Shown here: positions 2,758 to 24,434 of the stretch, one piece after another | How the letters are laid out: each line of letters opens with the position of its first letter | How positions within the stretch are numbered: the stretch's first letter is position 1 | Source of the DNA: Octopus bimaculoides | Taxonomy: Eukaryota | Length of the DNA: 64,000 bases | Direction of reading: 5' to 3' | Assembly (NCBI RefSeq): GCF_001194135.2 | Contig: NC_068985.1 | Location: 62,990,239 to 63,054,238 of the forward strand | Notes under the pieces: generated by a model | Databases searched by the model: none | What the model saw: only the letters and a program-made list of their open reading frames with translations | What the model was told of the DNA's origin: nothing | Translations under genes and position numbers: made by a program

Positions 2758-2797
2758 TTAAACCTGGTTGAAGCTGTACCGTTTTAGGTTTGATTTA

Positions 2798-2868
<71 letters not shown>
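2798..2868. repeat. (GA)n microsatellite
   Basis: Direct reading. Confidence 0.95.
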
Positions 2869-2873
<5 letters not shown>

Positions 2874-3744: not shown

Positions 3745-5110
3745 TATTATTTTTTATTATGCTGATGACCTTGCTCTAATTACTGAGTCACTATCAGAAC
3801 TAGAGGAAAAGTTTCAGGTGTGGAAGCAAGGATTAGAATTGCAGGGCCTTAGAGTCAACCTAGCTAAATCCAAAGTCTTAATAAGTAGGAACGCAGACAA
3901 ACCTTCCGGTAGATGGCCCTGCTCGATTTGTAGAAAAGGCATAGGTAGAAACGCCATAAGATGTACCCAGTGTAAGCTATGGACACATAAGAGGTGCAGC
4001 AATATCAAAGGGAGGCTACTGGGAAGATAGTTTTTGTATGTGGCAAATGCTCAGGTGCTATAAACACTGAAAATGTGCAGAGAACAGCTTCTGTCACATT
4101 CCAGGGAGAAAAACTAGACTTAGTTGATAGCTTCCTTTACCTAGGGGACCAAGTCAGTTGCAGGGGTGGATGCTCTGAAAATGTAGCTGCTAGAATAAGA
4201 ATAGCCTGGGCAAAGTTCAGAGAGCTCCTACCTCTGCTGGTGACAATGAGTTTCTCACTCAGAGTAAAAGGTAGACTGTATGACGCATGTGTATGAACAG
4301 CCATGCTACATGGCAGTGAAACATGGGCTGTGACTGCTGAGGACATGCATAAGCTTGCAAGGAATGAAGCCAGTATGCTCTGCTGGATGCGTAATGTCAG
4401 TGGTCATACACGACAGAGTGTAAGTGCCCTGAGAGAAAAGTTGGATTTAAGGAGCATCTGATGTGGTGTACAAGAAAGACGACTGCACTGGTATGGTTAT
4501 ATGTTGTGAATGAATGAGGACAGCTGTGTGAAAAAGTGTCACACCTTAGCAGTTGAGGGAACCTGTGGAAGAGGTAGACCCAGGAAAACTTGGGATGAAG
4601 TGGTGAAGCATGACCTTTGAACATTGGGCCTTACCGAGGCAATGACTAGTGATCGAGACCTTTGGAGATATGCTGTGCTTGAGAAGACCTGACAAGCCAA
4701 GTGAGACCATGGCCCATGGCCTATGCCAGTGGATGTAACCGGCCCACTTATGAGTCCCCTCTCATTCATTGGACAATGAACTTTGCTTGCAAAGACCTAT
4801 TAAGGTAAGTGAAAACAAATCAAACTTGCTGACATGGCTGATGACAGTACTGCCTGATTGGCACTCGTGCCAGTGGAACGTTAAAAGCACATCCGAGCGT
4901 GATCGTTGTCAGGGCCATGGATTGGCTCTTGTGCTGGTAGCACATGAAAAGCACCATTCAAGTGTGATCATTGCCAGAGTCGCCCTACCGGCACATGTGC
5001 TGGTGGCACATGAAAAACAACATTCAAGTGTGGTCTTTGCCAGTGCCGCTGGACTGGCTCCCGTGCAGGTAACATGTAAAAGTCACCTTTTGAGCTTGGT
5101 CGTTGTAGTG
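3745..5110 (+). mobile_element. 5'-truncated RTE LINE: RT C-terminus, PHD-like zinc finger, ORF end and repetitive 3' UTR (pseudogenised)
   Basis: YADD at 3758-3769, KSKVL, FLYLG, WAKFRELLPLL, GRGRPRKTW, ORF end VLEKT*QAK*. Frameshift near 4018 and several stops. Confidence 0.9.
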
Positions 5111-5114
5111 TTCT

Positions 5115-6055
5115 TCTGCATCTTGTGAGCCTTATGTACAATGATTGTTGTTGCAAGGTTTCCGCCAAAGTTTGCAGTCAAGATACTGTTATTGACACGT
5201 ATGATGCTGCTGAGTGCTATTTTAGCATTCTTATCAAAGATGATTCCTACAGAACCACATGCAGCACTGCTCTCATTCCTCCATGCTGATGTAATTACTT
5301 GGCTTTTTTCCTATTGGGTGTACTCTATCTCATCTTTGTGCATTATTTTGTGATCAGTTATTGCTAGGATGTTCATGCTGTAATATCTGAATAACTTTGC
5401 AAGTTCTAGTCTTTTATACTCCAATCGAATGGTGTGTACGTTTATAGTACCAATGTTTAAAAGTCTTTTGGCTTTTGCCAGTTAACCAGGTTTAACATAT
5501 GTTGATCTTTGCTGTCAGCCACATCTCTCCCATTAGAGTTTCAAGATATCATGTCATAAGTGCTGGATAAATCCTGACTTGCATTGACAACAGGTTGTAG
5601 ATTAGAGGCTTGAACCCTAGTGCAGCTAGTAAACCTTGTTATTTTGGCCTTTTGGTGGCTTAATACTGACAGGGGCACATACTCCTCCTGTAGATTGCAT
5701 TTCCTCATTAGTAGAGACATGATCTCCTTCAGTGACACATAAATTGCATATATTCAATAAATTAGTTTGTTGAAGCTTGCATCCATTGCATACCAGCCTC
5801 CTGCAATTCAAGGCTGGAATTTTTTATCATTGAAGTTTATTCTTTTAGGTACGTTTGGTCCAGGACTGTTTATTTTTATATTCACAGCTAACCTTCATAC
5901 CTGAAGGCCTTTCTCCTATCTTCCACCTGGGGACTTGGTGGATGGAAGTTTTCTCTCCACACCAGGGTCTGCCAAAAGATGATTTGGCTCAGTCTTCCCT
6001 ACCAAATGCCTTAGGGGCTCTCCCTGCAGATTTTCTGTAGGGGTTTACTCTCTTA
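5115..6055 (-). mobile_element. 5' part of a second RTE-like LINE (5' UTR plus endonuclease N-terminus)
   Basis: Minus frame 5475-5115 reads LLNIGTINVHTIRLEYKRLELA...ILAITDHK...ITSAWRNESSAACGSVGIIF...FGGNLATTIIVH, typical of an APE endonuclease N-terminus. The UTR boundary is approximate. Confidence 0.7.
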
Positions 6056-6174
6056 GCCTTTCATACTCATATGTTTATAAGCAGAAAGAAAAAAAAAAGG
6101 ATATAAGAGAATATAAAGATAATAATATAAAAATAAGAATATAAAAAGGAATATAAAAATATAAATATAGTATA

Positions 6175-6298
6175 GTAGGAATTCTGCCAGATCAGATTGG
6201 AGCCTGGTGTAGCCATCTGGTTCACCAGTCCTCAGTCAAATCGTCCAACCCATGCTAGCATGGAAAGCGGACGTTAAACGATGATGATGATGATGATG
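6175..6298 (+). mobile_element. RTE-type 3' terminal fragment with (GAT)n tail
   Basis: tcaaatcgtccaacccatgctagcatggaaagcggacgttaaacg(atg)n; the same sequence occurs at 45422-45485 and degraded on minus at about 7615-7765. Confidence 0.7.
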
Positions 6299-6324
6299 AA
6301 ATATAGACGGATGCTTAAAAATAT

Positions 6325-6368
<44 letters not shown>

Positions 6369-7009
6369 TACAAACATCCTGCACATATGTACATATTATT
6401 GAATGGCCATGCTTGGATAAGTGCATTGAAGACAAAGTAATTCTTTTGAATGCAAGTCAAACAGTGACCAGGAATCCTGTGTTCATCTATCTTCTCTGGA
6501 ACCTTCTCAAATCTCTGCACTAATTCTGGTATGCTTTCACTTTTGTAACCCCTTTTTATGCAAGAACATCATAAAACATGAGAGAACATTCTATAATATG
6601 GGGTGATATTACTACAAGCTGAATGGTTGGTATTCAGGGCACGTCACCTGATCTAGGTGTGGTCTGATCCTTGTTACTAAAGCTGTAAGGTTTTGATTCT
6701 AAGTTTTGTACAATTATATGACACTCTGTACTTGACTAGTAGTTTGCTTTATCAACTCCAGAGGGATTTTGTTGGGATTTGAACTAAGAATATAAAGAGC
6801 TTGAAAAATAATGAAAGACATTTAGCCACTGATTCTGCTTATCCACTGCTCTAATGATTTGTAATAATGCCACAAAAAAGCAAACAATTCAGTCCAAAAT
6901 GTCAACAAAAATTTTTTAAAAAAGCATAAAATCTCTATAAAAAGAAAACTTTTTTTTAATTGTGTAGAAAGTGACAAAATATATTTTAATAATCATTTCT
7001 ACTATAGGT

Positions 7010-7200
7010 ATAAGGCCTGAAAATTTGGGAGAGAGGGCTAGTTGATTACATTGACCCCAGTGCTCTACTGGTACTATTTCATTAACATTGAAAGAATGAA
7101 AGCAAAGTCTACCTTGATAGAATTTGAACTCAGAACATAAAGATGGACAAAATGCCACTAAGCATTTTGATCAGCATGCTAATGATTCTGATGGCTTGCT
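7010..7200 (-). mobile_element. SINE family B, old CpG-decayed copy
   Basis: Aligns by eye to 57275-57483 (B-box gagttcaaatt, ggggtcgat...aatcgac block) with CpGs mutated. A similar copy lies at 8470-8640. Confidence 0.7.
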
Positions 7201-10200
7201 GCCTTAAAATATATTTCAATAATGAAGAAATGGTTAGACTCAGAACATAAATATAACAAGATATGAGCATCAAATTTTTTATACACCCCATTTTTCTTAA
7301 ATGGAAACAAGGAAAATTTTTTAATTGGAACTTGAAGTTATAACATCTAGTCATTATTGAGTTTTTCAGTTTCAAGATATTAATTAGTTAATCTATTATA
7401 GCTTGATTAATTTCATAATTGAGTTTTTCAACATTATTCTCAAATAAAATTTACCCCAATTAGTGTCTGAAAGTACATACAAATGTAGAAATTTATTGGA
7501 TTTTGTTTTTCTTTCTAATTCACAGCATTAATCTTAATTATTCCTCAACTGGGAAATTTTCTGATGTCTTTGATATGACTCTCTCCATTAATGCCTATCA
7601 TTGCAATCTCTTTGACATCATTCAGTGTCTGTTTTCCGTACTGGTATGGGTTGAACAACTTGACTGGCTCTGGAAAATCATAGGGTTGCATTGAGCCCCT
7701 GTGTCAGCTTTGGCATGGTTTCTGTGGCTGGATGTCCTTTATAATGCCAACCACTGATCACTAGTGAGGTCACTAAGTAACTTTCAAAAGAAGAAAAGAG
7801 CAAGAAGAAGGAAAAAGGAAAAAGCCTCCTCCACTAAATGGATATCTGAGAAGAGTATAGGAGAAGTGGTGCTTCTATGCCAGGTATTGAGAGGCTGAAG
7901 TGTAAAGGGACAAACTGAAGCTATAGAAAAGATACAAGACTGCCCCACATTAGGTGGGTGGTAGTAGCTGGAAATAAAACAGATAGTAGTGGTGGGATAT
8001 CTGGGCATCACAACATACAAAAAAGGTGCATATAAAGGAGGATATAGTCAGTGGATCAGGGGTGAGAGGGGGAAGTTTTATAAGAGTGTTAAGGGTAAGC
8101 AAATAAATGGTTAGAAATAAAAGAATGTATATAGTGATAAGCAAGGGTGAAGGTGCAGTTGATGGGAAATACCAGTATAGAGAGGGGTGAGATGAGAGAT
8201 GTAGGAGTGGTTTAGGAAGAAGTATAGGTCAAAAAGTAGGGGAATGACGTGTAAATTGTAGGAGAGGTGAGGAAGGATATGTAGCGGTACATGAGGTGTG
8301 GGTGGGGCATAGTAAGTGGGGTGTGATGGCAGATATGAAAGTGTATTGAGAATGATAACAAATATGAAAGGTATTAAGGATGGAATGATATATGTGCCAA
8401 TTCTGCCCTCTGTTGATCGCAGCAGTTGAGTAGCACCTTCTAAGAAAGATACAAGACTGAGAATTTGGTGTTGGGGTCAGTCGATTAAATCTACCTCAGT
8501 ACTTGACTGGTACTTTATTTTGTCAAACCTGGAAGGTTGAAAGGTTAAATTGAAATTGGCAGGATTTGAACTCAGAACATAAAGAGCCAAAACCATACTG
8601 CAAAATATTTTGTGTAATGCACTAACAATCCTACCAATCCACATAATTAGTAATAATACCTGAATTTCTGTAAGCTTAATTTTAATGACAGAATTTTTGT
8701 TGTTGTTGTTTAGCTCCAGGACAGTCCTGATTGAGTAGTACTATGATTATAGACGTTCTAGATGTGATCATCCTCTTCTTCATGCAAAATATATCTAGGA
8801 CTACACTATCTAACATATTCCATTTTGTTTAATGATGGCTGGAAGATTTGGTTGCTATTTGTAGCATCAAATGCAGCCATGCTGAGGTGTCCTGAATGGC
8901 TTGTTATACAGTTGTTGTTTAATATCAGAGTAAGATGACTTGGTCACAGTCTGGAAGGGAAGGACACATTAGGTAATGTAGTCCTAGTTAGTCCTAACAT
9001 GACAGGCTGGTCACAGCTGATCTACTAGATTTGCTCAATCAGGATTGAGATGGAGATACATAACAGCAATGACAGCTGTCTTGTAATCACCCTGTTACTA
9101 TTTCTCTTGCAACTAACACTAAATTGGTTTCAACTATATCACTTTGTCATAATCATTATCATAGTAACTTCAATGATCAACACGTTCAGTTGTTTCTCTA
9201 CCCACTTATAAACATGACACTAAAACACCTCACTAGTTGCCTGTCTTCCTAAGTGTCAGGGTGCGAAGTAACATTTAATATAACAACAAATCAACCATGA
9301 ACCAACAATGCTCTGCAGCTGTAACTGCATCATTAACAAGTGGGTAGCTGCAATATTAAAAACAAAATACTTATCATTTCCTCAAGAAAAAAACACAAAA
9401 TGTTGTCAAGCAAATTGTCTTTCAAGTCACCATTTCTGTCTTGAGTATAACAGCAATACAGTTAGAGCAACTCATTTCTCTTTTGCCAATCCTTTGTAGT
9501 GTACAATAATTGCATAACAATAATATTTAGTTTCCTTGAATGAGATAAAAGAATCTCTCCTTTCACTCATTCTTTTTAACTTGTGCCTGCTCAAAAAGTA
9601 AATGCAGCTTCATATACTAATAACAACAATGTGTTAAGATGTATCTCACCAATGAGAAGTTAAAGGAAAACTTGCCATGCTGTGACTGAATTAATCCTGG
9701 TCATGCCCACTGTGGCCACCACTGAAACTATCTGATACACAAACATGAATTGTTTATGTACAGGGAAGCAGTATGTCTGGATTGTTAAAATGGATCTTAT
9801 ATGACAAACATTGCATGTTGGGATGTACTGTATAGTTTCTCAGTTTTGCAGAGGTATGGAATTAACTGGAATAGATTATACCTAATTGTTTCACTGACTT
9901 CATGAGTACCATAAATATGCTTACTTAGGGGTTGGCCTAGTGTTAAACAAGAACAGAACAATGCCATTAAAGGGAAAATAAAGTGATTCCTGATGAATAA
10001 TTTCGTAGGACAAAGTGAGTGCTGTTGTTTAGCTCTCAGTCATTCTTGATTGAGTTGATCTATGATTTAAGGCAGTCCAGCTGTGACCATCCCACTTACT
10101 TATTTACAATCCATTCAATATGTTCTTCCTTTTTCAAAATGGTAGAGTGTGATTTGAGGGAGATTAAGTTGTAATTTTAAGCAAGATGACATGTAGAGGC

Positions 10201-10739
10201 TGTCATTTTCTTCCATGTCTGTGGTGTGCCATGAAGATAACGGCATTAATATAAAGGTTAATGAAATCAGAGATGACAGAACGCTGACTCTCACTAATGT
10301 TGTTGACATTGAATAATCCAAACTATTACAACTGTGAAACTTGATAGGGATTTGTTTATTGTAAATGCAAAATGGATTTGAAAGGGCAAAAATATAATTA
10401 TGAAAAATCTATAGAACAAATCAAATTAAGGGTTTACTGTATATCTGTGTATGCATTACTATTGGGTAGTTTGCTGTATATTTTTGTACAAATTACTAAA
10501 TGATATTATAGTAAGAAATATATTATATCTTTACAGTGATATTGTAGCAAACTCATAAGAGGCGGAGAGAGAATGTAGGTTCGTTTGCCCGAACATGAGA
10601 AATTATTGATTTCTCATTGGTTAAAAATTACTGCCCATATATGAATTCTGAACTTCATTGAAGAAGTCTTTCACGAGGTATGGTTTTAGGATTTGTGTAT
10701 GAGCAGTTATAAAAACCCTGATTTTTGGGAAACTCTCCA

Positions 10740-10860
10740 GTGATCATTGGATTGACACTCAAATCCATGACACTCACTCAAGTGATCGTTGGATGCCACT
10801 CAAATCCACGACACTCACTCAAGTGATCGTTGGGTTGTGACTCAAATCCATGACACTCAC
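10740..10860. repeat. Minisatellite, 3 units of 41-42 bp
   Basis: gtgatc(a/g)ttgg...actcaaatcca(t/c)gacactcactcaa starting at 10740, 10782 and 10823. Confidence 0.85.
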
Positions 10861-11437
10861 CCTCTTGAGTATCGGCTAATATTTATACCATGTTCAATAC
10901 TCAAATCCGACAATATTGAATTGTTATGAACTCTTATAACTAGAATGAAAGATTAGTTAGTATAAAATTTAAGTTGTAATTCTCTACGACGAAATAACTT
11001 TATTTCTAACTGTTCTATGAATGCCAAAAATGTACATAATAAACTGATGTAGAAATTTAATTCCTTTTACTTCTCGTTTCTTTCAACTTGTTGAATTTAT
11101 TTCTGTATATTAATGAAACTGTATTTTTTTATGTGTAACAGTCAAAAAAATATAATCTATATCCTCAACATACATGTACGTATGAACGCACGTTCAGCAT
11201 TTTGGTATGTATACATCATAACATTTACGCAGCCTAAACTAAGAGTTATGCTTAGTGATAAATACTTATAATTAAGTTATAAGTAACGAGATTATCATTA
11301 TAGCTTTTAATTAAGAAACAATAATATTTGTTATAACTTACGATTTGTTATAACTTACATTGTAAATAAAGATATAGTATATTTCTCACTATCCGACCTG
11401 TTATTTACATAAAAATATATTTGTAAGTAAATATATT

Positions 11438-11455
11438 ATTTTTCTTTCGTTTCAG
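11438..11455 (+). promoter_or_regulatory. 3' splice acceptor of the giant exon
   Basis: Polypyrimidine tract atttttctttcgtttcAG; the last in-frame stop (TAA 11428-11430) lies just upstream. Confidence 0.8.
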
Positions 11456-14400
11456 GTTCTCTATTTACAATATTTGACAAGTCAAAAGATGACAGAACAT
11501 CTGGTATATTGATGCATTTCAAAGATGATGCTTCATCAGTCGAAACTTCAGTGAATTTGTTTTCTAGTTTTACACAAACTCAAGCCAAATCATTCCCTCA
11601 GCAATATCAACTTGAAGTTCTTCTTAGTCCTTCTAGTTCTTCTTATTTCCAGTCTAGTTCATCTATTTTACTTTCCTCAAATAATTTACAAACTAATGGC
11701 CCCTCAGTTTCTTTGGCATCATCTTTAGTTGAAGCTTGTCTTTCAATTTCTATGTTTAACAGTCTTACTGCCAATATTGAAGACCCTAATAATTTGCATT
11801 CCATTGAAATATCACAATCCGAATTTGTATCTGAAGGTGACAGCTCCATTTCAGATATTCTTAGTCCATATTTCCAACCACTTGATAACTTTTTTTCTAT
11901 ATCTAATTCTTTGTTACTAAATTCAACTAGCCAAATATTGAAATCTATTTTAGCACTAGAAAATTTAAATGATTCTATGGCATTGGAAAACTTTCCTGTT
12001 GTCAAAATGAAACCATTAATGAAGGAGCAGAACATCAACCAAAGTAAATTTGATTCACAGATTTATACCAGTTTTACTGGAGTCAATTCTTTAAATATTA
12101 ACAGTAGACTATTGAATATAAATACTAGTTATGCACATAATTTTAAACAACAGCCACACACTCAAATTAATTCAGACTCTCCATTTGATGAAATGATGTC
12201 AGAATCACAATTATTTTCATCATCATTTACTGTGAAATCATCACAGCCTTATATATCCCCTATTTTTCAAACTAAAAGTAAACTTCTCTCAGAGATGCAA
12301 ACTCGATCAGATTTTAATCTTAATGCAAAACAATATTTTATTCAGAAGAATATTAATTCTTTATCTACATTGAAAGATCTTATAACCAAAAAGTTTGTCC
12401 CTACTGAGACAGAGAATCTACATGGAGCTCTAATAATTTATTCTACCCAACAAATGCTATGGGCTAATTCTAAGACAGAAAGTATGTTACCATATCAATA
12501 TGATCAAACTAAACTATTTGTTCTTCATCCTTCACAATCACAAATTTCTCAAATAGATGAAATAGAAAGTCTGTATCCAATCAATAAAAATCAAATATTC
12601 TTATACAGTGACCATTTCTTGGGATCTTTTCAAAGTGCAATATCCCAGAGTTATTCAAGCCCATTTAAACATTTTACCACAAATGAGAGATCATTTTCTG
12701 ATTTGAAGTTCTCTCTATCAGGAAAGACTTTTGCCTCAGTAAATGATCCAGCTTCTTCCACTTTTAGAAGACCTATTACCAATTCGGATTATTCATTGGA
12801 ATCTAATTCATTACATCAGCCAAAATTTGTCAAACTAACCATATCTCAGTTGATCTCAGCTTATTTTGATGAATCTCAAATACGTTTTGATAGTAAAGAG
12901 CTTTTATATATGGCAACTGCTGCTACCATTTCGGAAATACCTCAACAACAAACAAAATGGTTAAGTAACTCTTTCAATTTTCAGAAATCTTTTCACAATA
13001 ATTTGTATCAATTTATCATACCAATGTCTCATTTTAATGATAATCAATCATTACTACCATCATTAAAGTCTGAAACTTGGGATATATTTAATGAATTTTG
13101 GAAATCAAAACTTGAGCCAGTGATAATGAAATCATCTGAAGCTAATCTTTTTGGCTCTAATAGTGATAATTTAGTTCCATCTTTGAGACATCAAACAACA
13201 GATGTTGTAAATCCTACCCAGAGCATGTTACAACATTTCTTGGAGAATTTGTATACAGAGTCTGATACAAAAGAATCTCCATACTTATCAAATACAGAAA
13301 TATTGGAACCATCTGAGACTGTGAGTTTAGTTAATGTTGAGGACTTTTTGTTGAGGACCTTACAAAATATTTTCCCATTATTTGTGTCTTTAGGAAGAAC
13401 TAATACAGACACTTCCTTTACTTCATCTTCAGAAGAATTATTTCATTTACTAAATTCAGGTCTTTCATTTCATACTCAACCTTCTCACAGCATGGAACTT
13501 TTACAACCATCTACTCACACATACATTCCTATTACTGATTTATCTGAACTATCTTTAACTTCTTCACAGATTCAAATGCCATCAAGTTTTCAAGGTCCAG
13601 TTAATTTTGATCTTATGAACAAATTTTCTTCACCTAATATGATCTTTTACTCAGATTCTGAACAAATATTTCAAACCTCTCCTGAAAATTTCCAACCATC
13701 TCTTACCAAATCAAATGTCTTCAGTGAGGGGCATGATAGTTATATTTATGATAGCTTACACTCAAAATTGGAAATTATTACAGCACCAAAAGATTCATTT
13801 GATAAAACTCAGAGTTATTCCAATCCTGTTATTTCCAGCCATATTCCAGAATTAATTGATTCATATTCAAGTTTTTCAACTTTAGAAATACCTGAAAATA
13901 CTTATTTCTCTACGTCTTTATTACCTCTAACATCATTGAAGTACTTAATTAGTACATCATTAACTCCCGAAGTAATTTATTCAAATCCTTTTCTGCCTAA
14001 TTCCATTCAGTTTGATAAACCAAAATTTTCACTATATTCTCCTGAAATAATTGAAATATCTTCTATGATTGATCAGTTTACACAAGAATTGCCATTGATT
14101 ACAACTTCAGTTATTGAAAATACCATAGAATCAAATTTCAAATATTCTCCAACATCTACTTCTTCACAAAGTTCAAATTTCATTAGTTCCACAGAAAATG
14201 GAAATACTTCCATATTGGCATCATCCTACTCCAGTAATTCAGTGAATCCTGTTTATGATTCTTCAGTGATAAATGTTGCTGTCACCAATTTTACCATGCA
14301 TAATAGTTTGGTATCAACCTTACATTCTGACATTGACTATCAACTGGAATCTATATATTCATCATCAGAATCTGTTTATCTATATTCATCTCAGACACCA

Positions 14401-14848
14401 CTGTTTGTGTTGTCAAGTTTTATTAGTGAAGATAAAGAATCTAACCATTTAATTCCAGAATTTAGCTATCTGTATTCATCTCAGACATCTATGCTTGTAT
14501 CATCAAGTTTTATTAGTGAAGATAATTCAAACCCCAAATCTTCCTCAAATATATCTAATTCTAGTGTATTCGCTTCAAATAATTTAACACTTTCATCCAA
14601 ACAAATGGCAACTTTGTTGATATCAAATTATACTTTAGCATCAATTAATATCAATACTTCAACAAAACAAGAGTCATTGAATAATAACTCTGAAACAAAG
14701 CGAATTTCAAATCTTTTGACTGCTACAGAAAGTAGTTCCATGCAAAAAGCTGAATTTTATGCTTCTACTTCATCTGTATTGGAAATGTTTTCTCGAAACA
14801 TGCAGCTCAACAACAGCCTTTATTTTCAACATTTTTGGATTGTTACAA
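11456..14848 (+). CDS. Giant internal coding exon, about 1131 aa, Ser/Thr-rich mucin-like extracellular region of an unidentified protein (partial gene)
   Basis: Uninterrupted 3.4-kb ORF in AT-rich DNA, bounded by ttcAG| and |GTAAGC. Length 3393 = 3 x 1131, phase 1 at both ends. Very high Ser, a single Cys, and clustered N-x-S/T sequons near the C-terminal end. Confidence 0.85.
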
Positions 14849-14854
14849 GTAAGC
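14849..14854 (+). promoter_or_regulatory. 5' splice donor GTAAGC
   Basis: ACAA|GTAAGC; encoded composition changes abruptly afterwards and (TA)n/(GAT)n-like tracts follow. Confidence 0.7.
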
Positions 14855-15830
14855 CAATTTTAGTGATATTTCTATTTTTACTTGGTCACACAAAATACTT
14901 TACTGTTCTGTGTCTTTCACATTCTTCCTATATATATATATATGTTAATGTCTTATTTATAGTCAGAAATATGGTAGAATCTGCTGTTGCTGATGATGAT
15001 AATGACAGTGATGGTGACGATATGATTCTCATTGTAGAATCTGTTGAAGCATTGCTGTATAAAGAAAGCAAAACATGAAGTTTGGTTTATTTCCTTGGGC
15101 CCGAATGTCAACATGTCAAATACTAAACTTAATATCAGTGACATGGAGCATGGCACTGCAGGGACCTTGGCAGATATGTAATACAGGAGATGGTACATCT
15201 TGTTTAATTTTATTGCGATTTTCTTTCTGTTTATTTTGTTTCCTCAAAGATTTACTATTTGGTGGCCAGCTTGGAGTTCCTAACATATCTAATCTTTAAG
15301 ACCCAATTAAAACATATGTTGCTAACCCACCAAGTTTGTTGAATTTCCATTTTTTAATTGTATTAACTTGTTCTGAACCTCCCCACCATCTGAGGCACTT
15401 TCATGCAGAGCTTTGTTTCCTTTCCTTATAACTACTTTTGTTAATCTCTTCCCCTTTTCACTTTTGCTGCTGTTTCTAGCACAGTGAGTGTCTCTATAGA
15501 TACTACCATATTGGCACATTTTTAGCAGGTCTCCTTTTATTGGTTTGTAGGTGTTAGATGTGAACAGAAACCATTGTTCTTCCTCTATAGGGAAGTCTGT
15601 GAATCAGTCTGTTAAGGTTTCTAATAGAATCTAAAAGAACTGTGGTTTAAAGATAATGTAGCAGCACAGAACCTCAAACACTGGGGGTATTCAGATATTG
15701 TTCACGATTAACAATGTTTAAAAAAGGGACAACCTTGAAAAAATGATTATTTTCAGGGAAGAAATTATTATTTATGATTCTGTAAAATTATGAATATTAT
15801 AATTGATATGTGTGTATGTGTATATATATA

Positions 15831-15857
15831 TCTATGTATATAAAACTGAGGACGTGT

Positions 15858-15928
<71 letters not shown>

Positions 15929-16030
15929 CCCACAGAACTTTTGAAGTTCACAACCGATTTTCTCCAAATTGGGAACATACATTACTTATGTTCCAGAGAT
16001 AGTTTTAGACTCTTAAAATTTTTCACATAA
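15831..16030 (+). mobile_element. Possible non-autonomous Helitron-like fragment with internal (TG)n
   Basis: Starts TCTATGTATATAAAACTGAGG, then (TG)n, then aaccgattttctccaaatt. The assignment rests on pattern recall only. Confidence 0.35.
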
Positions 16031-16154
16031 TGAAGAAGGGGACCCTGGGAACAGAAAACCCCTTTTCCTGGGTAAACAATACAAGCAATTGCGTAACTTG
16101 GTTGCTTTGTTGGTTCAAGGGACATATTGATGACATTTTTTCTACCTCTATATA

Positions 16155-17002
16155 TTGGGTCATCCCATAAATAACACAGTTTTTTATACTTCTTTTATTT
16201 TTCAAAATTATAAGATAAACAAGGTTCCTTTTTAATCTAAAATTTATGATGAAAAATACTCTTCCAGTACTGTTCTGACTTCATCTACAGAATTCATATT
16301 TTTTCCATCCGAATGATTTTGAGGACTGCGGAATAAATGATAATCAGATGGGGCAATATCTGGCAAATATGGTGGGTGGAGCATTGTTTCCCATTCAAAC
16401 TGCTCCGGCCTTTGGAATGTCATACTTGCTGTATGTGGCTGAGCATTATCCTGATGGAAGAACACCTTTTGTCTTGAAACCAAATATGGTCGTTTTCCAA
16501 TGGCACACAGGTGTTAATGAATGGTTGAATGACCAAATCCAAGCTTCTCTGTTAGTTCCTCAACAGTTACAATGGAATTTTGTTCCATCAGGGTTTGTAG
16601 GATGTCCTCATCAAGCTCTACAAATCTTCCAGGATGAGACTCATCTTCTAGGCTGTAGTTTCTGGCTCGGAATTTCTGGAACAACCATTGACACTGGCTT
16701 ACTCTTATTGTCCAATCCCCATATACTGCATTAATATGCCTCACACTTTCCATTGCATTGTTGCGTTTATTGAACTCATAGAGCAAAATATGCTGAATAT
16801 GCTCCTTTGTCACTTCCATTATAGCTTTGAAAAAATGACTGTTAAAATTGAAATGCACTCTTCAAAATTTGCACTAAGAATAAGTACAAGGTAAAATTAC
16901 TACCTGCTTTTATAGTAAGCTGATGCAGCTAGTTTATCCTGTTCTCCTCCGACTTTTAGTGCATGTAATTGAAAAAACTGCATTATTTATGGGATGACCC
17001 AA
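16155..17002 (-). mobile_element. Internally deleted mariner (DD34D) transposon, 848 bp
   Basis: About 30-bp TIRs TTGGGTCATCCCATAAATAA(CA/TG)CAGTTTTTT; TA on the left, TG on the right. Transposase MEVTKEHIQHILLYEF... and HQDNAQPH...HPPYLPDIAPSDYHLFRS with D34D spacing. Confidence 0.93.
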
Positions 17003-17233
17003 TGTTATGCTTTTTCTCTACTGATCTGTTACGGAGCTGAATTGATGCTGCTTTCCAGTGATTGATAGTTATCTGAATTCACTGCCAATCAACAGTTTTT
17101 GTAGCAAAAATCTCAGATGGTTCTGAGATTTTAGTACTGTAGCAAAGCTGTAATCAAATTGTATTACAGTAGCCAGTAGTTGTTCGTGTGTTCTGATGCT
17201 GACAAAATGACAGACGTGGGCAGCAGAACAATT

Positions 17234-17450
17234 GTGGCTGCATGGTAAGAAGTTTGCTTCACAACCACATGGTTCCAGGTTTAGTCCCACTGTGTGACAC
17301 CTTGAGCCGACCAAAGCCTTGTGAGTGGATTTGGTAGATGGAAACTGAAAGAAGCTCGATGGATGGATGGATGGATGGATAGATGACGGACAGACAGACA
17401 GACAGACAGATGGCCATAGTCTAGTGACTGAAACAAGTAAAAGATAAAGG
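17234..17450 (+). mobile_element. SINE family A, old deleted copy with (GGAT)n(GACA)n insert
   Basis: A-box ggctgcatggtaag, B-box-like ggtttagtccc, gtggatttggtaga block, tail tgactgaaacaagtaaaaga. Confidence 0.75.
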
Positions 17451-17654
17451 ATAAAATATATACTCTCCAGTACCAAAAAATTGTACAAAATATACTAGAA
17501 TCAGCAATAAAACAAACATGCAAATTAACTAAATATTATTTCTCATATAAATCTGTCCAACTATGAAGAAAGTATTAAATCCTTTCATTAGGCAAGCTTT
17601 TGATCTCTGCCTTACAGGGCATTAAAAAATCAGCGCTTCAGAAGAAAACAAGGA

Positions 17655-17785
17655 ATTCTGGTTTAAGCACCCCATATAACTCCTCATAACTTTTTTATTT
17701 TTTCAAATTTTCAGAAAATTTTTGTGAATTTGTGTTCTACGCATGGGAATTCATATGATTAAGGAAGAAAAAATTTTTTTTAACC
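17655..17785 (+). repeat. Left arm of a ~130-bp inverted repeat (partner at 21853-21969)
   Basis: attctggtttaagcaccccatataac... matches the reverse complement of ...gttatatggggtacttaaaccagaat. Confidence 0.75.
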
Positions 17786-17934
17786 CCATAAATCTTAAAA
17801 GTTCCACTCTTTTTCGAATGTTTTTTTGAATTCAGAGTTTGAAATACAGACCGTTCTTGAGTGCATCATTATTCCATTAAATGAGTTTATGGGGAGAAAA
17901 AAATAGACACATAACAGAATGATAAAGAAATGAG

Positions 17935-18139
17935 TGTAGCTTTGTTAAGCTATACACAAATAAACTCACAGAGATGAGAATGTATTAGTGAAAGATCTAT
18001 TCCCATAAGTACATCAGGGTGACAGCCACCTCTTTAAGGCCAACTCGACTGAAAGTCTACTTCACTGCAGACCAGATCCCTAGCTAGCCTGCAGCAAAGT
18101 TCCTGTCTGAAGTTTGTCTGTCATAAACCCTGCCCTACA
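17935..18139 (-). repeat. 3' LTR (205 bp)
   Basis: TGTAG...CTACA termini, adjacent to the polypurine tract. Confidence 0.9.
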
Positions 18140-18152
18140 TAGCTCCCCTCCC
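18140..18152 (-). promoter_or_regulatory. Polypurine tract GGGAGGGGAGCTA
   Basis: Immediately internal to the 3' LTR. Confidence 0.85.
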
Positions 18153-21100
18153 GCTAGAACTGTTGACTGTCATTGGAACCAGGAAGACGTTTTAATTGGA
18201 GAGTGGACCAGGACCTGCATCCCCTGTCAACAAGCCAAAGTTCATCAGCACACCAAAGCACCCCTTGGCAACTATGAACCACCACAGGCCCGTTTCAGCT
18301 GCTGAGATTTTCTTTTGGGGTGGTGTGGATTCCCAGCATCACCATGCAGTTGGGCCTGTTAAATCTGGTTGTCAGGGATTCCTTCAAGTGGCAGTGAAAT
18401 CTCTCCATTCCGTTGGCTTGTGGATGGTAGGCTGTTGTGCAGTTCATTGTGATTCCAAAACGGTCACATGTCTTCCACAGCTTTGATGTGAATTGTAGAC
18501 CCCACTCAGATGAGATGCTATCTGGGACACCAAAATGGGTGACTCAGTTTGCAATGAAAGCTCAGCTGACTTCTTGTGTTTCTGTGCTGCAGGCCAATGG
18601 GTATAGCGGTCTACCAAGGTCAATGAGTGTAGCGGTCTACCAAGGTCATTAGGTATAAGCAACCTTGTGATGGTTGACAAGGGTGCTGACAAGGTCGATA
18701 TTGATGTGGCTGAAACAGGCGTGGTTCATAGTTGCCAAGCGGTGCTTTGGTGTGCTGATGAACCTTGGCTTGTTGACGGGATGCAGGTTTTGGTCTACTC
18801 TCAAATTTGCTTGGCCATACCATGCCAAATAAATCTGCTTGACAGCAGGTGCTGTGTGGTTGTAGTACCTGGGTGGGACAGTCTGTGAATGACATCGAAA
18901 ACTTTCCTGTGCCAGGATGATGGGACAATTGGTTGTGGCTTCAGACAGTAGGGTTGTGCCGTTGGAGCCAATGTGCACATTCTGCAAGGAAAGTAACATG
19001 ATGGCAGTGCGGTAGGACCTGATCTCATCATCTGTCTGTTGGGCTGTAGCCATAGTCACGTAATCCAGGCCTTCTGTTATTGGAGCTAGGTAGGTGTGAG
19101 AACAGGTCGGAGCACAAGAGAGTGCATCGGTGACTGGGTTGTCTTTTCCAGCTATATCTTGGGCGTCTGTAGTATAGTCAGAAATGGTTGGTAGCTGTCA
19201 TTGCTGGCATGCAGACCAAAGCTCTGAGAGCTTGCTCATAGCAAAAGTGAGTGGTTTGTGGTCTGTGAACACTGTAACCTTGCAGCCTTCAAGGAAATAG
19301 CGAAAGTGGCAGACACCTAGATGGACAGCCAGTAGTTCCCTGTCAAAAGCACTGTATTTCTGTTCAGGGGGGTCATAGTTGTTGACTGAAGAAGGCGAGT
19401 GGTCACCACTGACTGTTGATGTGTTGTTCTAAAATACCCCCAAAGGCTGTGTCTGGGTCGTCAACTGTAAGTGCAGTCCATGCTGACAAATGGAGATGGG
19501 ACAGCATGATTGCTTTAGCCAGGGCCTGTTTTGTGGATTTGAAGGCTGAGATCATTGCACCATCCCACTTCACCTGTTTTTTTAACCATCTTTTGACAGT
19601 GCCTTGTATAGGAGTTTCATCACTCTTGCTGCAAAAGGGATGAAAAAAATGGTAAAAGTTTACCATGCCCTTGTGTAGAGCCTTGCTTGTGGTGGGGTGT
19701 GGAAAGACATGATAGCTTTTCACTTTTTCCAGCAGGGGTGTAGCATCTGCATCTGTGATTCGATGTCCCAAGAAGTCAATTTCTGTAACACCAAAAACAT
19801 ACTTGGCAGGGTTGATTACTAAGCCATACTGTTCCAGTCTATCAAAAAGAGTCATTAGGTGCTTCTTGTGTAGCTCTGCATTTTGACTTGTGATAAGGAT
19901 ATCATCTAAGTATGCAAAGACAAAATCAAGACCTCTGCATACTGTGTTCATCAAGTGGAAGGATTGTGCTGTGTTTTTCAGGTGAAAGAGTGTACATAGG
20001 AATTCATACAGACCAAAAGGAGTGATCATGGTGGTTCTCAGTACATCATCATCATCTTGTCCTGGTATTTGATGGTAACCTCAGATGAGGTTGACCTTCA
20101 GGAAGACCGAGCACCCAGCAAGTTGGGCTGAGAGATCCTGTATGTGTAGAATGGGGTGCAGTCAGATGTTGTATCTGCATTGAGACGGTGGTAATCTCTG
20201 TGGGGTTGATAACCTCCATTGGGTTTGGGGGACACATGCAGGGATGACAACCAGGGACTGTTTGATTGGCGAACTATGCCCAACACCTCCATATTGTCAA
20301 ACTCGGCCTTTGCGATAGCAAGTTTGTCTGGTGATAGATGATGTGCGCAGCTGTGCACTGGGAGGGACTGGTGGTGGGGATGTAGTGTGTCACTGTGGTG
20401 TATTGCAGGGATGGAGAATGTCGAGGTAGTGAGATTGGGGTGACTCACAAGGAGGTTTGAGAATTCATTCTTGGTCTGAGAGACGGTTGCTATGCGGNNN
20501 NNNNNNNNNNNGGGGGGGGGGGGGGTGCAGATGTTGCCAGAGACACAGAAGTGTATGTGTTGCTGTTGATGAGTCGTCTACCCTGCAAATCAACCAGTAG
20601 CAAGTGTGCTTGCAAGAAAGTCTCCTCTGATAATGGGCTGATGGACATCAGTGATGGTGAATGCCTATGTGTATTTTTGCGAGCCAATGTTGAAAGAAAG
20701 GATGTGATGACTGTACACCTTGATTGTAAACCTGTTGCAGCTGTTAAAGGTCGACCTCACTTTCCATAATGGAGGTCCCTTGCCAACGTTGAGATCACAC
20801 TGACTTCTGCTCCTGTGTCAATTAGGAACCTACATCTGGAGCTCCGATCACAGACATAGAGGAGCAGTTGATTGCATCTGCCGGCCACCAGGGCATTCAA
20901 TGGCAGCCAGCCTTGGAGTTTCCCTGAGCCAATGGGGAAGGGGTCCTGAAGCTACATGGTTGTTTGCTCTTTGTAGTCTTTTTCCTGAACTTTGTATGGT
21001 AGAAGCACAGGTTGTCTTGCTTAACTCTACCATGTCTTGGGTCCAACCCTGTGGTGTTTACCATAACATCACTGGATAAAAAATGCTTGTCGGCTGCTTT

Positions 21101-21551
21101 CACTAACTGCTGCAGGTCCTTGATCTCGGTCTGAGTTATGAGAGCTTGGACCTGGAGTGGTAACTTGTGGAGGAATATTTCCCTAATGCCAACATCTTGT
21201 CCATCAACTTCGAAGGCTTAGAATTACCTAATTCCTCCTCCAGTATCTTGGCTGCTGCTTCTTGTTCACTGCACCGGAATGTATTCACCAGTCTGTCTTT
21301 TAATGTGTATTTGTGTGTTGCTGGGGATTGGGTTAAAATGTCCAGCATCCTCGTTGCCGTATCTTCATACAGTGCCGCTACAACATATGAATATTTTGTT
21401 AGGTCTGCAGTTATTTTGTGTATGTTAATTTGGGTTTCTGCCTGTGCGAACATAGCTGAGCCCTCTTAGGCCAGAATTGTGGTAGCTTCAGTGTTGTTTT
21501 GTGATTGCTTGCTATGTTTATTTCGATAGCAAGAGCTGTTGTTCTATCACA

Positions 21552-21563
21552 CCGGGGTCACCA
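21552..21563 (-). promoter_or_regulatory. Primer binding site TGGTGACCCCGG
   Basis: Begins with TGG, 2 nt from the 5' LTR end. Confidence 0.85.
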
Positions 21564-21565
21564 GT

Positions 21566-21783
21566 TATAGCTTTGTTAAGCTATATACAAATAAACTCAT
21601 GGAGACAAGAATGTGTTAGTGACAGATTTATTCTTTTAAGTACATCAGAGTGACAGCCGCCAGTTATTTCTACCTCTTTGAAGCCCACTTGACTGGAAGT
21701 CTACTTTGCTGCAGACCAGCTCCCTAGCTAGCCTGCGGCGAAGTTCCTGTCTACAGTTTGTCTGTCATAAATCCTGCCTTACA
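21566..21783 (-). repeat. 5' LTR (218 bp)
   Basis: Aligns to 17935-18139 with about 27 substitutions (hand count) and one ~13-bp indel. Confidence 0.9.
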
Positions 21784-21852
21784 CAAGGATGGTATCAGGT
21801 GGTCGTGCTATGTGCTAAAATCAACAGTTAAATCACCCTTAAACCACACACA

Positions 21853-21969
21853 TAAAAAAGACATTTTTTTTGCATAATCCTGTGTGTAGAACATAAATTT
21901 GCAAAAGTTTTTTGAAAATTCTGAAAAATAACAGTTATGAGTTGTTATATGGGGTACTTAAACCAGAAT
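21853..21969 (-). repeat. Right arm of the inverted repeat flanking the Gypsy element
   Basis: Reverse-complement similarity to 17655-17785. Confidence 0.75.
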
Positions 21970-23662
21970 ATGTTGACAGCATGTCAGCTGGCTCAAAAGC
22001 AAGCAGTAAAAAGTATGCTTTTTTCTGCTTTTTCCTCTGTGACCTCCCAGTCTACTTTTATCTCTCTTTTCCACCTCCCTTCTCAAAAAGAACACTACTC
22101 ATTTTTCCTAACAATAACTGAAATTAAGCAGAAAAAAATCTTCTTGTCTCTGCCTTCCCTCATTTGTTTACCTCTGCCTGTCTCCCTTTTGTTTTTTTCT
22201 CTACATGCTTCTTACTTGAAAAGGTAAGTAAATAGTATGGCATGCAGTGCATGTGTTGTATACCTACACCCTTCAAAATCAATATTTAAAATGAGATCAT
22301 TAGTTGTATTGCTGCTACTATTGAAGTTGAAATTAAGGCAATGATAAAAAAACAAAAAAAAAAAACATTATTTGTTGCTGTTATGTTTGATGAGGATATG
22401 GATCTTTGAATGAAATCTCAATTGTTACGTATTTTGTGATTTGTTGATGAATTTCCCAAAACGTACTGAAGAATTGAACTGATTTACAAATAAATTTTGA
22501 ATGGTTTAATATTTGTATTATTTTCTCAGATTTCTCTTGTAACTAATAACAGTCTTCATGACGATATATATATATATATAATATATATATATATAAATGA
22601 AACAAAAATGCAATAGAGGGCCTTAAAACATTTGGACAGATAGACGATACAAAGGCAGACAAGAGAAACAACAATTAGAAGGACAGGCAAAAAAGAGACA
22701 GGTCATTCTTGGCTTTCTTAATCAGTCAAGTCCCAGAAGTCATGACTATTTCGGGCAGTTACGCTTGAGATGGTTCGATCTGATTGCCCCCCAAAAAGCC
22801 TAAACTAAGAGCATTAAACCCCTTTGTAAGAAAGCTAGCGAATGTGTACAGCAACAAAGACAAAAAAAACCAAACAAACAAAAAATAAACCGGAGAACAT
22901 GGTACACAATTATGAATACAAACAACAAGAAATAACAACAGGCATCTTTCAACTGAGAACGAATCAAATTGAGCTGGTGTGTATGAAGTGAAAGCCTAAA
23001 GGCAGGAACATGGGAGATGGACACAAGAGGTGTTGGCAGTTAGCAGATCATGGCTGGCCAGACACTGGTCACGTGGAAGGAGGAGAGATGGGTAGGGATT
23101 GAAGGATTAGAAAAAAAAAAAATCAATGACAAAGAGAAAGGTACAGGGGAGATAAATGAGTGGGAAATAGTGGGAGTTAAAGAAAAAGAGGGCCAAGAAA
23201 TGTGAGAGAGGGGGAGCGAGAAAAAGGAAAAATGAGAGGGGGAATAAAAGATAGAGTAAGAGTCGTACAAAATTTAGATACATACATATAAGTTGAGCAC
23301 AAGGGTGTACATGCGTATGTATGTATATACATATATCATCATCATCATCATCGTCGTCGTCATCATCGTCATCATCATCATCATCATCACCATCATCACA
23401 GTCCTCATCTTCTGAGGAGCTGTGATAGCACATACTTCCGTATAGAAAGAATGACGCCTCCAAAACCGACAATCGAGGTGTCCGTTTCGCCTGCCTACCC
23501 CGCCTGAGGATTGTCTTAAGAGCGTGAAGCTCTAAGTGAAGGAACAGTACGAACTTCAACTATAACCCTATGTATTACAATGTGTGTGTGTATGTGTATG
23601 TGTGTGCACGCATGTGTGTGCGTGAATGCGTACGTGTGCGTGTGTGTGTATAGATAGATAGC

Positions 23663-23774
<112 letters not shown>

Positions 23775-24399: not shown

Positions 24400-24434
24400 C
24401 TTTGACGTTTCGAGCTACGCTCTTCAACAGAAAG
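24400..24434 (-). ncRNA. Minimal type-I hammerhead ribozyme-like motif with variant core CUGUUGA
   Basis: CUUU-CUGUUGA-A-GAGC(GUA)GCUC-GAAA-CG-UC-AAAG, inside a ~190-bp repeat (24304-24490). Confidence 0.55.

What the first reader, a model, noticed from the sequence alone, without database searches (positions are those of the whole stretch)
11456..14848. 3.4-kb symmetric phase 1-1 exon encoding a 1131-aa Ser/Thr-rich, almost Cys-free stalk
Seen: canonical acceptor and donor, length divisible by 3, no stops, one Cys, and little internal repetition. Established: phase 1-1 exons typify modules of extracellular proteins and can be skipped without frameshift. Long S/T-rich stalks occur in mucins and adhesion GPCRs such as ADGRG4/GPR112. 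Inference: this is a large glycosylated spacer of a cell-surface or secreted protein, perhaps an alternatively spliced length switch. It is probably lineage-specific and poorly annotated.
Basis: partly seen in the sequence, partly recalled or inferred. Interest (0 to 1): 0.72.

Follow-up and report, generated by a model that had tools for sequence, protein, structure and literature searches.

The report
Octopus KIAA1549 gene's giant ectodomain exon
The 3.4-kb stretch is a real, expressed exon of Octopus bimaculoides that encodes the long serine-rich outer part of the octopus counterpart of the human membrane protein KIAA1549; it is an ordinary member of a known family, but the public annotation splits the gene in two.

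Summary
Window 11456-14848 (+) is a 3393-nt, phase 1-1 exon with no stop codon, one Cys, 19.7% Ser and 7.3% Thr. Transcript contigs stop exactly at both boundaries: four RNA runs at the 5' boundary and seven at the 3' boundary.

The genome is Octopus bimaculoides. The letters beyond the boundaries encode the end of a signal-peptide exon (..ELLPSYSLPS) and the start of the next exon (IIKVRSDIDV..). That next exon carries the Pfam KIAA1549 domain (PF12877), one transmembrane helix and a long cytoplasmic tail. The exon is therefore exon 2 of the octopus KIAA1549-family gene. It encodes the ectodomain region that in human KIAA1549 is a disordered, mucin-like, O-mannosylated domain. Its last 15-37 codons already belong to the conserved juxtamembrane domain, which carries an RKKR furin-type motif about 82 residues before the membrane.

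The stalk sequence has no detectable relative outside Octopus. No contig shows exon skipping or internal splicing, but skipping could not be tested directly. It is not an adhesion GPCR or a classical mucin.

NCBI annotates two "uncharacterized" genes about 270 kb apart on opposite strands. This is most likely a scaffolding error.

Verdict: a new member of a known kind, of modest interest.

The parts
11431..11455 (+). 3' end of intron 1: polypyrimidine tract and AG acceptor (ttatttttctttcgtttcag)
   Evidence: Sequence read directly. RNA contigs from X2, X3, X4 and X6 start at 11456, preceded by exon-1 sequence.
11456..14848 (+). Exon 2 of the octopus KIAA1549-family gene: 3393 nt, phase 1-1, 1130 full codons plus two split codons
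   Evidence: Open frame and composition. 100% match to O. bimaculoides XP_052823700/XP_014776960 and 92% to O. sinensis. RNA contigs end exactly at both boundaries.
11458..14802 (+). Ser-rich, acidic, nearly Cys-free ectodomain region ('stalk'). It has 14 N-x-S/T sequons, no Pfam domain and no homologue outside Octopus.
   Evidence: AlphaFold2 gives mean pLDDT 24.7 with almost no secondary structure.
14347..14525 (+). The only internal repeat: a tandem duplication of 90 nt / 30 aa (..YLYSSQT..SSFISED..), 78% identical
14803..14847 (+). Last 15 codons (QLNNSLYFQHFWIVT), the start of the PF12877 (KIAA1549) match. In the O. sinensis orthologue the match starts 37 residues before the exon end.
   Evidence: Pfam match on the spliced O. 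bimaculoides segment: 62.3 bits against a cut-off of 24, starting at residue 26 of a segment whose first 40 residues come from this exon. P0003 match 1148-1332, with the exon ending at residue 1184.
14849..14854 (+). Donor site gtaagc of intron 2
   Evidence: Seven RNA runs continue from 14848 into TCATTAAAGTTAGAAGCGATATCGATGTAA, which is L001 10050 onward.
14233..14239 (+). Cryptic in-frame (phase 1) internal donor A|GTAATT. It corresponds to the junction used in the chimeric O. vulgaris model P0004. No use is seen in O. bimaculoides contigs.
   Evidence: No joints within the exon.
14963..15078 (+). Terminal coding exon of NCBI's models for LOC106873933 (IRNMVESAVADDD...KESKT*), reached through a 114-nt intron. 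It has no RNA support here.
   Evidence: P0001/P0005 C-termini. No 14848->14963 joint in 8 contig runs. Zero raw reads over 14849-15300 in X19-X21.
1..11430 (+). Part of intron 1. Exon 1, which carries the signal peptide, lies about 18 kb upstream of the window start (L002 10001-10148).
14855..64000 (+). Apparent intron 2, or sequence up to an assembly misjoin. It contains no further exon of the gene, 13 N-gaps, a reverse-transcriptase fragment and microsatellites.

Best explanation
Shown. Window 11456-14848 is the constitutively included second exon of the Octopus bimaculoides member of the KIAA1549 family (Pfam PF12877). The mRNA joins three parts:
- a signal-peptide exon about 29 kb upstream;
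- this 3393-nt exon;
- a set of downstream exons that encode a juxtamembrane domain, one transmembrane helix and a cytoplasmic tail of about 550 residues.

The exon supplies nearly the whole ectodomain. That is about 1100 residues that are Ser-rich, acidic, almost Cys-free and non-repetitive, with no predicted fold. It also supplies the first 15-37 residues of the conserved juxtamembrane domain.

Inferred from human KIAA1549 (PMC13570299, PMC11292533, bioRxiv 10.1101/2025.08.18.670743). The stalk is a disordered, heavily O-glycosylated region, probably O-mannosylated by POMT1/2 in the ER, that holds or presents the protein's outer end. After ER exit a furin-type convertase cuts at the conserved RKKR motif, about 82 residues before the membrane, in the membrane-proximal SEA-like domain. 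The stalk is then either shed or stays non-covalently attached, as in a signalling mucin.

The stalk is conserved within Octopus (92% identity, all indels in frame) but diverges beyond recognition outside the genus, as composition-constrained spacers do.

Annotation. NCBI's two genes, LOC106873933 and LOC106878674, are the two halves of this one gene. Their divergent placement about 270 kb apart in assembly GCA_001194135.2 is most likely a scaffold orientation or placement error.
For: Exon reality: open frame with P about 4e-38. Exact contig boundaries across 8 RNA runs from 5 studies.

Joins: the loose end before 11456 translates to ELLPSYSLP+S, which equals residues 38-47 of O. sinensis P0003 and the end of exon 1 in L002. 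The loose end after 14848 equals L001 10050-10079 and translates to IIKVRSDIDV, which is P0003 1185 onward.

Family: PF12877 scores 59 bits (P0003), 48.5 bits (P0006) and 62.3 bits (spliced O. bimaculoides segment) against a cut-off of 24.

Topology: a single hydrophobic TM segment, P0003 1311-1345, and a signal-peptide-like N-terminus.

Furin-type motif: RKKR at P0003 1230-1233 with the TM from about 1315. It aligns with RRKR in the distant homologue P0009. The human site RMWR1211 lies 88 residues before TM 1299 and is reported conserved from human to placozoa.

Stalk nature: no Pfam hit. AlphaFold2 gives pLDDT 24.7 with no domains. Ser is 2x enriched and Cys 25x depleted.

Conservation: stalk 92.4% identical to O. 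sinensis, against 93.5% for the SEA-like domain plus TM and 95.2% for the tail. There are five indel events, all in frame.

One gene in relatives: the O. sinensis gene spans 138.6 kb and the O. vulgaris gene 169 kb, each on one strand.
Against: Glycosylation, furin cleavage and disorder are not shown for octopus.

The composition is a poor fit to a classical mucin or a typical disordered region:
- S+T is only 27% and Pro 4.7%.
- 34% of residues are large hydrophobic or aromatic.
- Every 100-residue window falls on the 'ordered' side of the charge-hydropathy boundary.
- Only 30 of 1121 ten-residue windows have 6 or more S/T.

The low AlphaFold confidence comes from an alignment of only 4 sequences, so it does not prove disorder. 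The SEA-like fold was not recovered (pLDDT 45). Only one SEA-like domain is detectable, against three in human.

In the public assembly the two halves lie on opposite strands. This contradicts a simple cis gene unless the assembly is wrong.

Contigs drop rare isoforms, so 'constitutive' means only 'the dominant form'.
Confidence: 0.78

Rival explanations
1. The exon is an alternatively spliced cassette. Because it is phase 1-1, skipping it would join the signal-peptide exon in frame to the IIKVRS exon and give a stalk-less receptor. Alternatively, internal splice sites might shorten the stalk.
For: The phase 1-1 symmetry is real, and exon 3 also starts in phase 1. An O. vulgaris NCBI model (P0004) uses an internal acceptor near 11853 and an in-frame internal donor equivalent to 14233; that donor sequence A|GTAATT is present here. 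Contigs that include downstream exons have 2-4 times the mean depth of mid-exon contigs. Examples are X3 at 66.8 against 16.6 and X5 at 33.8 against 8.95. This could reflect transcripts that lack the exon, or simply 3' bias.
Against: No joint inside the exon and no skipping-type contig appears in 8 RNA runs. Every contig that reaches 11456 or 14848 is spliced to exon 1 or exon 3. Both O. sinensis isoforms keep the exon and differ only by 37 residues in the tail. The last 15-37 residues of the exon belong to the conserved domain, so skipping would truncate that domain. P0004 is a chimera of three unrelated genes, so it is a doubtful model.
Confidence: 0.12
2. NCBI's annotation is right. LOC106873933 is a separate gene that encodes a secreted Ser-rich protein, ending in the small exon 14963-15078 with no membrane anchor.
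For: Gnomon models XP_014776960 and XP_052823700. The frame stays open through a 114-nt intron with a good acceptor (tcttatttatag|TCAG) to a stop at 15076-15078. In the assembly the KIAA1549-domain gene lies on the other strand.
Against: Seven RNA runs splice 14848 to the IIKVRS exon and none to 14963. No raw read covers 14849-15300 in about 5.4 Gb read from three runs. O. sinensis and O. vulgaris have a single collinear gene.
Confidence: 0.04
3. The two halves really do lie about 270 kb apart on opposite strands in O. bimaculoides, and the mature mRNA is made by trans-splicing of two separately transcribed pre-mRNAs.
For: Coordinates in GCA_001194135.2: exon 1 to exon 2 is on the + strand at 62.97-63.005 Mb, and exon 3 onward is on the - strand at 62.702-62.620 Mb. 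The junction uses canonical GT and AG sites.
Against: The assembly is full of gaps: 13 N-runs in this window alone, one of them exactly 500 N. The two gene models date from the fragmented first assembly. Two congeners have collinear genes. From general knowledge, genic trans-splicing of this kind is very rare in animals.
Confidence: 0.04
4. The stalk is not a disordered glycosylated spacer. It is a folded, lineage-specific ectodomain, for example beta-rich, whose fold the tools cannot see because the alignment is too shallow.
For: Hydrophobic and aromatic content is 34%. All windows fall on the ordered side of the charge-hydropathy plot, and dense S/T clusters are few. Sequence conservation within Octopus is as high as in the juxtamembrane domain.
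Against: AlphaFold2 gives pLDDT 20-33 throughout with almost no secondary structure. There is no Pfam domain. Having one Cys in 1130 extracellular residues is unusual for folded ectodomains. The equivalent human region is experimentally a disordered O-mannosylated domain.
Confidence: 0.12

Closest known systems
Human KIAA1549 (UPF0606; Pfam PF12877) and its paralogue KIAA1549L
   Same: Same order of parts: a signal peptide, a long Ser/Thr-rich ectodomain without recognised domains (human O-Man domain 62-864 plus S/T-rich 865-950; octopus about 1100 residues), a membrane-proximal SEA-like domain with a basic convertase motif 82-88 residues before a single TM helix, and a long cytoplasmic tail.
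   Different: There is no detectable sequence similarity in the stalk. Only one SEA-like domain is detectable against three in human; the Pfam match covers profile positions 101-280 of 676. The motif is RKKR rather than RMWR. The octopus stalk is Ser-rich but not Thr-rich or Pro-rich, and it is rather hydrophobic. O-mannosylation and cleavage are untested. Whether the human stalk is also encoded by one giant exon was not checked.
Transmembrane (signalling) mucins such as MUC1, and alpha/beta-dystroglycan
   Same: Type I membrane proteins with a long O-glycosylated spacer, a cleaved SEA-type juxtamembrane domain, a TM helix and a signalling tail. The KIAA1549 papers draw the same comparison.
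   Different: There are no tandem PTS repeats, only one 30-aa duplication. S+T is 27% and Pro 4.7%. No Pfam SEA hit and no G-S-hydrophobic autoproteolysis motif was reported. In human KIAA1549 the glycan type is O-mannose, not O-GalNAc.
Adhesion GPCR ADGRG4/GPR112
   Same: A very long Ser/Thr-rich N-terminal region; that it is encoded largely by one giant exon is recalled, not tested here.
   Different: The octopus protein has one TM helix and no GAIN, 7TM, pentraxin or other adhesion-GPCR domain.

Membership tests
KIAA1549 family (Pfam PF12877) | Significant match to the PF12877 profile in the protein that contains this exon | tested here: met
   62.3 bits (E 4e-17) on the RNA-supported O. 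bimaculoides splice product, 59 bits on O. sinensis P0003 and 48.5 bits on P0006, against a cut-off of 24. The match starts inside the exon.
KIAA1549 family (Pfam PF12877) | The exon and the PF12877-encoding exons are on one mRNA | tested here: met
   Seven RNA runs continue from 14848 into L001 10050 onward, the IIKVRSDIDV exon.
KIAA1549 family (Pfam PF12877) | Type I topology: N-terminal signal peptide, single TM helix, long cytoplasmic tail | tested here: met
   Only one hydropathy peak, P0003 1311-1345. The N-terminus MDMVPSDDIFKTSQLLILIFWIILNSQVQC|HK has a short hydrophobic core. No dedicated signal-peptide predictor was available.
KIAA1549 family (Pfam PF12877) | Basic proprotein-convertase motif in the membrane-proximal SEA-like domain, about 88 residues before the TM (human RMWR1211, TM 1299) | tested here: met
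   RKKR at 1230-1233 with the TM from about 1315. It aligns with RRKR in P0009. The literature reports conservation from human to placozoa. Cleavage itself was not tested.
KIAA1549 family (Pfam PF12877) | SEA-like (ferredoxin-like) fold of the juxtamembrane domain | tested here: inconclusive
   The AlphaFold2 model from 2 sequences has mean pLDDT 45, too poor for a fold search.
KIAA1549 family (Pfam PF12877) | Dense POMT1/2-dependent O-mannosylation of the N-terminal ectodomain | not testable with these tools
   Known for human. It needs glycoproteomics of the octopus protein.
KIAA1549 family (Pfam PF12877) | Sequence similarity of the stalk itself to other family members | tested here: not met
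   phmmer against 1.84 billion representatives gave one hit, Octopus vulgaris. The word-based search gave 4 hits, all Octopus. This region lies outside the Pfam model, so it does not decide membership.
Classical mucins (PTS tandem-repeat domains) | Tandemly repeated Pro/Thr/Ser-rich units with very high S+T+P content | tested here: not met
   No tandem array, only one 30-aa duplication. S+T is 27% and P 4.7%, and the longest S/T run is 5.
Adhesion GPCRs (ADGRG4-like) | GAIN domain with a GPS site, followed by a seven-helix membrane domain | tested here: not met
   Pfam on the full-length orthologue finds only PF12877, and there is one TM segment.

The most novel reading that the evidence does not exclude
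The divergent placement of the two gene halves, about 270 kb apart on opposite strands of O. bimaculoides chromosome CM046605.1, is real, and the KIAA1549-family mRNA is assembled by genic trans-splicing at the exon 2 donor (14848).
Probability: 0.04. Interest if true: 0.8.

Novelty: new member of a known kind. Interest (0 to 1): 0.3.

Why it matters
KIAA1549 is the partner in the KIAA1549::BRAF fusion of childhood pilocytic astrocytoma and is a retinitis pigmentosa gene. Its normal function is still unknown.

A clearly assignable cephalopod orthologue shows what the family keeps and what it lets drift. It keeps a long, Cys-free, Ser-rich ectodomain, a basic cleavage motif at a fixed distance from the membrane, and one TM helix. 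The ectodomain sequence is free to change.

Practically, the result corrects the O. bimaculoides annotation in three ways. LOC106873933 and LOC106878674 are one gene. The annotated terminal exon 14963-15078 is unsupported. The chromosome-scale assembly probably has a misoriented or misplaced scaffold here.

It does not reveal a new kind of system.

Tried and rejected
- Pfam on the exon product at E<=1 found nothing.
- tblastn and a 5-mer search for the flanking exons in the window found none, so they lie outside it.
- A word-indexed homologue search with the C-terminal half gave one distant hit, P0009. The same search with a 3-sequence alignment gave none. No deep alignment could therefore be built.
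- AlphaFold2 of the juxtamembrane region gave pLDDT 45, so no fold search was run on it. AlphaFold2 of the stalk gave pLDDT 24.7.
I did not attempt it by another route.
- Orthologous DNA for dN/dS could not be fetched because the O. sinensis and O. vulgaris genes exceed 100 kb.
- Self-BLASTP for internal repeats returned only the diagonal. The DNA repeat finder was used instead.
- Raw-read runs X19-X21 express the gene too weakly to say anything about minor isoforms.
- Rejected readings: adhesion GPCR, classical mucin, and a stand-alone secreted protein as annotated.
Full report

Yes, at exactly the stated coordinates.
- The sequence reads ...tttctttcgtttcag|GTTCTC at 11455/11456 and TTACAA|gtaagc at 14848/14849.
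- The exon is 3393 nt. The reading frame starts at 11458, so both ends are in phase 1. It has 1130 full codons and no stop, while the other five frames have 59-138 stops.
- The open frame runs from 11431 to 15075 (1215 codons). In DNA of this composition the chance of that is about 4e-38.
- There is one Cys against about 27 expected from base composition. Ser is 19.7%, twice the expectation. Thr is 7.3%, as expected, so the region is Ser-rich rather than Ser/Thr-rich. Pro is 4.7% and the net charge is -47.
- The only internal repeat is one 90-nt tandem duplication at 14347-14525.

**2. Is it expressed and spliced as proposed?**

Fourteen runs labelled RNA of one organism hold the exon's words. 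I laid the contigs of eight of them, from five studies.
- The contigs cover the exon without any internal joint. They stop exactly at 11456 (X2, X3, X4, X6; also X5, whose contig has only 2 letters before it) and at 14848 (X1, X2, X3, X4, X5, X7, X8), then run on into sequence that is not in the window.
- The 30 letters before 11456 read CGGAACTTCTTCCAAGTTACTCTTTACCAA. Joined to the exon, they translate to ELLPSYSLP-S-SLFT.
- The 30 letters after 14848 read TCATTAAAGTTAGAAGCGATATCGATGTAA. These give ..WIVT-I-IKVRSDIDV.
- No contig reads into either intron.

**3. Whose exon is it?**

- The translation is 100% identical to Octopus bimaculoides LOC106873933 and 91-93% identical to O. sinensis and O. 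vulgaris proteins.
- The O. sinensis protein P0003 (1864 aa) shows the whole gene. It has a signal-peptide-like N-terminus (47 aa), the product of this exon (residues 48-1184), a region matching Pfam PF12877 'KIAA1549' (59 bits, cut-off 24, residues 1148-1332), one hydrophobic TM segment (1311-1345) and a tail of about 520 residues.
- The flanking exons are not in the window.
- Exon 1 lies at L002 10001-10148, about 29 kb upstream of the exon.
- The downstream loose end is identical to L001 10050-10079. That is the first coding exon proper of a second NCBI gene, LOC106878674 (P0006, 733 aa, PF12877 at 48.5 bits).
- The spliced O. bimaculoides segment scores 62.3 bits on PF12877, and the match starts 15 residues before the end of the window exon.

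The exon is exon 2 of the octopus KIAA1549-family gene. It encodes almost the whole ectodomain plus the first residues of the conserved juxtamembrane domain.

**4. How it most likely works**

Human KIAA1549 is a type I membrane protein with these parts (PMC13570299; bioRxiv 10.1101/2025.08.18.670743; PMC11292533):
- a signal peptide;
- an unstructured, mucin-like O-mannosylated domain (aa 62-864, at least 92 O-Man sites, made by POMT1/2);
- a further S/T-rich stretch;
- three SEA-like domains, the last with a furin site RMWR1211;
- a TM helix at 1299-1319;
- a cytoplasmic domain.

In human cells O-mannosylation is needed for ER exit, and furin-type cleavage follows in the Golgi. The cleavage motif is reported conserved from human to placozoa. 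The protein's normal function is unknown, although it is found at the photoreceptor connecting cilium (PMC12969115).

The octopus protein has RKKR at 1230-1233, 82 residues before its TM helix; the human distance is 88. The motif aligns with RRKR in the only distant homologue I recovered, P0009.

I infer three steps:
- The exon's product is the glycosylated spacer of this receptor-like protein.
- It is probably O-mannosylated.
- After cleavage at RKKR it is either released or held non-covalently, as in signalling mucins.

AlphaFold2 gives pLDDT 20-33 over all 1130 residues with almost no secondary structure. This is consistent with disorder, but the alignment had only four sequences.

**5. Cautions**

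- The composition is not that of a typical mucin or disordered region. S+T is 27% and Pro is low. Large hydrophobic and aromatic residues make up 34%. All 100-residue windows fall on the ordered side of the charge-hydropathy boundary, and dense S/T clusters are few.
- The juxtamembrane model was too poor (pLDDT 45) to test the SEA-like fold.
- Only one SEA-like domain is detectable. The Pfam match covers profile positions 101-280 of 676 in octopus and starts at about position 125 in P0009.
- No glycosylation or cleavage data exist for octopus.

**6. Conservation**

- An exhaustive HMMER search of 1.84 billion representative proteins found only Octopus. The stalk sequence is therefore genus- or lineage-specific as far as this collection shows.
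- Within Octopus it is 92.4% identical, with five indel events, all in frame. That compares with 93.5% for the juxtamembrane domain plus TM and 95.2% for the tail.
- The single Cys is invariant in the four sequences.
- dN/dS could not be computed because orthologous DNA was not retrievable.

**7. Length switch?**

Phase 1-1 is real, and exon 3 starts in phase 1, so skipping would keep the frame. Even so, nothing supports a switch:
- No contig shows skipping or internal splicing.
- The annotated O. sinensis isoforms both keep the exon.
- The exon's 3' end is part of the conserved domain.

Two points leave a minor isoform possible. An O. vulgaris model uses an internal phase-1 donor that is also present here (A|GTAATT at 14233/14234), but that model is a three-gene chimera. 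Contigs that include downstream exons have a higher mean depth, which may only be 3' bias.

**8. Annotation and assembly**

- NCBI ends LOC106873933 with a small exon at 14963-15078. No contig joins 14848 to 14963, and three raw-read runs have no read over 14849-15300.
- In GCA_001194135.2, exons 1-2 lie on the + strand at 62.97-63.005 Mb. Exon 3 onward lies on the - strand from 62.702 Mb downward.
- The O. sinensis and O. vulgaris genes are collinear, at 138.6 and 169 kb.
- The window alone has 13 N-gaps, one of them exactly 500 N, and it starts right after a 4957-N gap.

A scaffold orientation or placement error is by far the likeliest reading. Real trans-splicing is the low-probability alternative.

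**9. Verdict**

The region is an extracellular spacer that is lineage-specific and poorly annotated. The proposed families were wrong, and the splicing switch is unsupported. The exon belongs to a new (octopus) member of the known KIAA1549 family. Interest is modest: 0.3.

Noticed in passing
window 14849-64000 with L001 and L002 (GCA_001194135.2, CM046605.1 at 62.61-63.05 Mb): The two halves of one transcript are placed about 270 kb apart on opposite strands and are annotated as two genes, LOC106873933 and LOC106878674. This is probably a scaffolding error in the chromosome-scale assembly.
   Followed up: partly
window 20498-63489 (13 N-runs, e.g. 51020-51519 = exactly 500 N; 59171-59755; 62995-63489): 3319 N in assembly gaps. 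They explain the 'ORFs' that are open in several frames on both strands in the mechanical ORF list (around 30.1, 31.8, 37.7, 42.4, 43.3, 51.0, 59.1, 61.7 and 63.0 kb).
   Followed up: yes
window 26598-27046: An (ATG)n-type microsatellite of about 148 copies at 78% purity. It gives the stop-free ORFs on both strands at 26.6-27.3 kb.
   Followed up: partly
window about 15855-15926: A (GT)n microsatellite attracts RNA contig depths above 100,000 and hundreds of odd joints. This is cross-mapping of simple repeats, not expression of this locus.
   Followed up: yes
window 19403-20029 (-): A 208-aa ORF with the end of a reverse transcriptase domain (PF00078, 46 bits) and the start of an RNase H-like domain. 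It is a retroelement fragment that the assembly annotation calls a gene.
   Followed up: partly
window 53199-53777 and 29183-29329: A 216-nt unit repeated 2.7 times that, by eye, resembles a tRNA-derived SINE (GGTTCAAATTCCGCCGAGGTCGAC-like box); no tRNA or SINE search was run. There is also an 18-nt unit repeated 8 times.
   Followed up: no
window 12670: A C>T variant (His to Tyr at stalk residue 405) is carried by the contigs of runs X3, X5, X7 and X8 but not by X1, X2, X4 or X6. It is a non-synonymous polymorphism.
   Followed up: partly
window 10397-11312: Short RNA contigs with depths of 28-200 and many mismatches lie in intron 1 just upstream of the exon and are not joined to it. They are probably expressed repeat copies from elsewhere in the genome.
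   Followed up: no
P0004 (O. vulgaris XP model 'myotubularin-related protein 13-like isoform X8'): This NCBI model fuses DENN-domain, reprolysin/ADAM-type and KIAA1549 parts, and enters and leaves the orthologous giant exon at internal sites. It is probably a chimeric gene model.
   Followed up: partly
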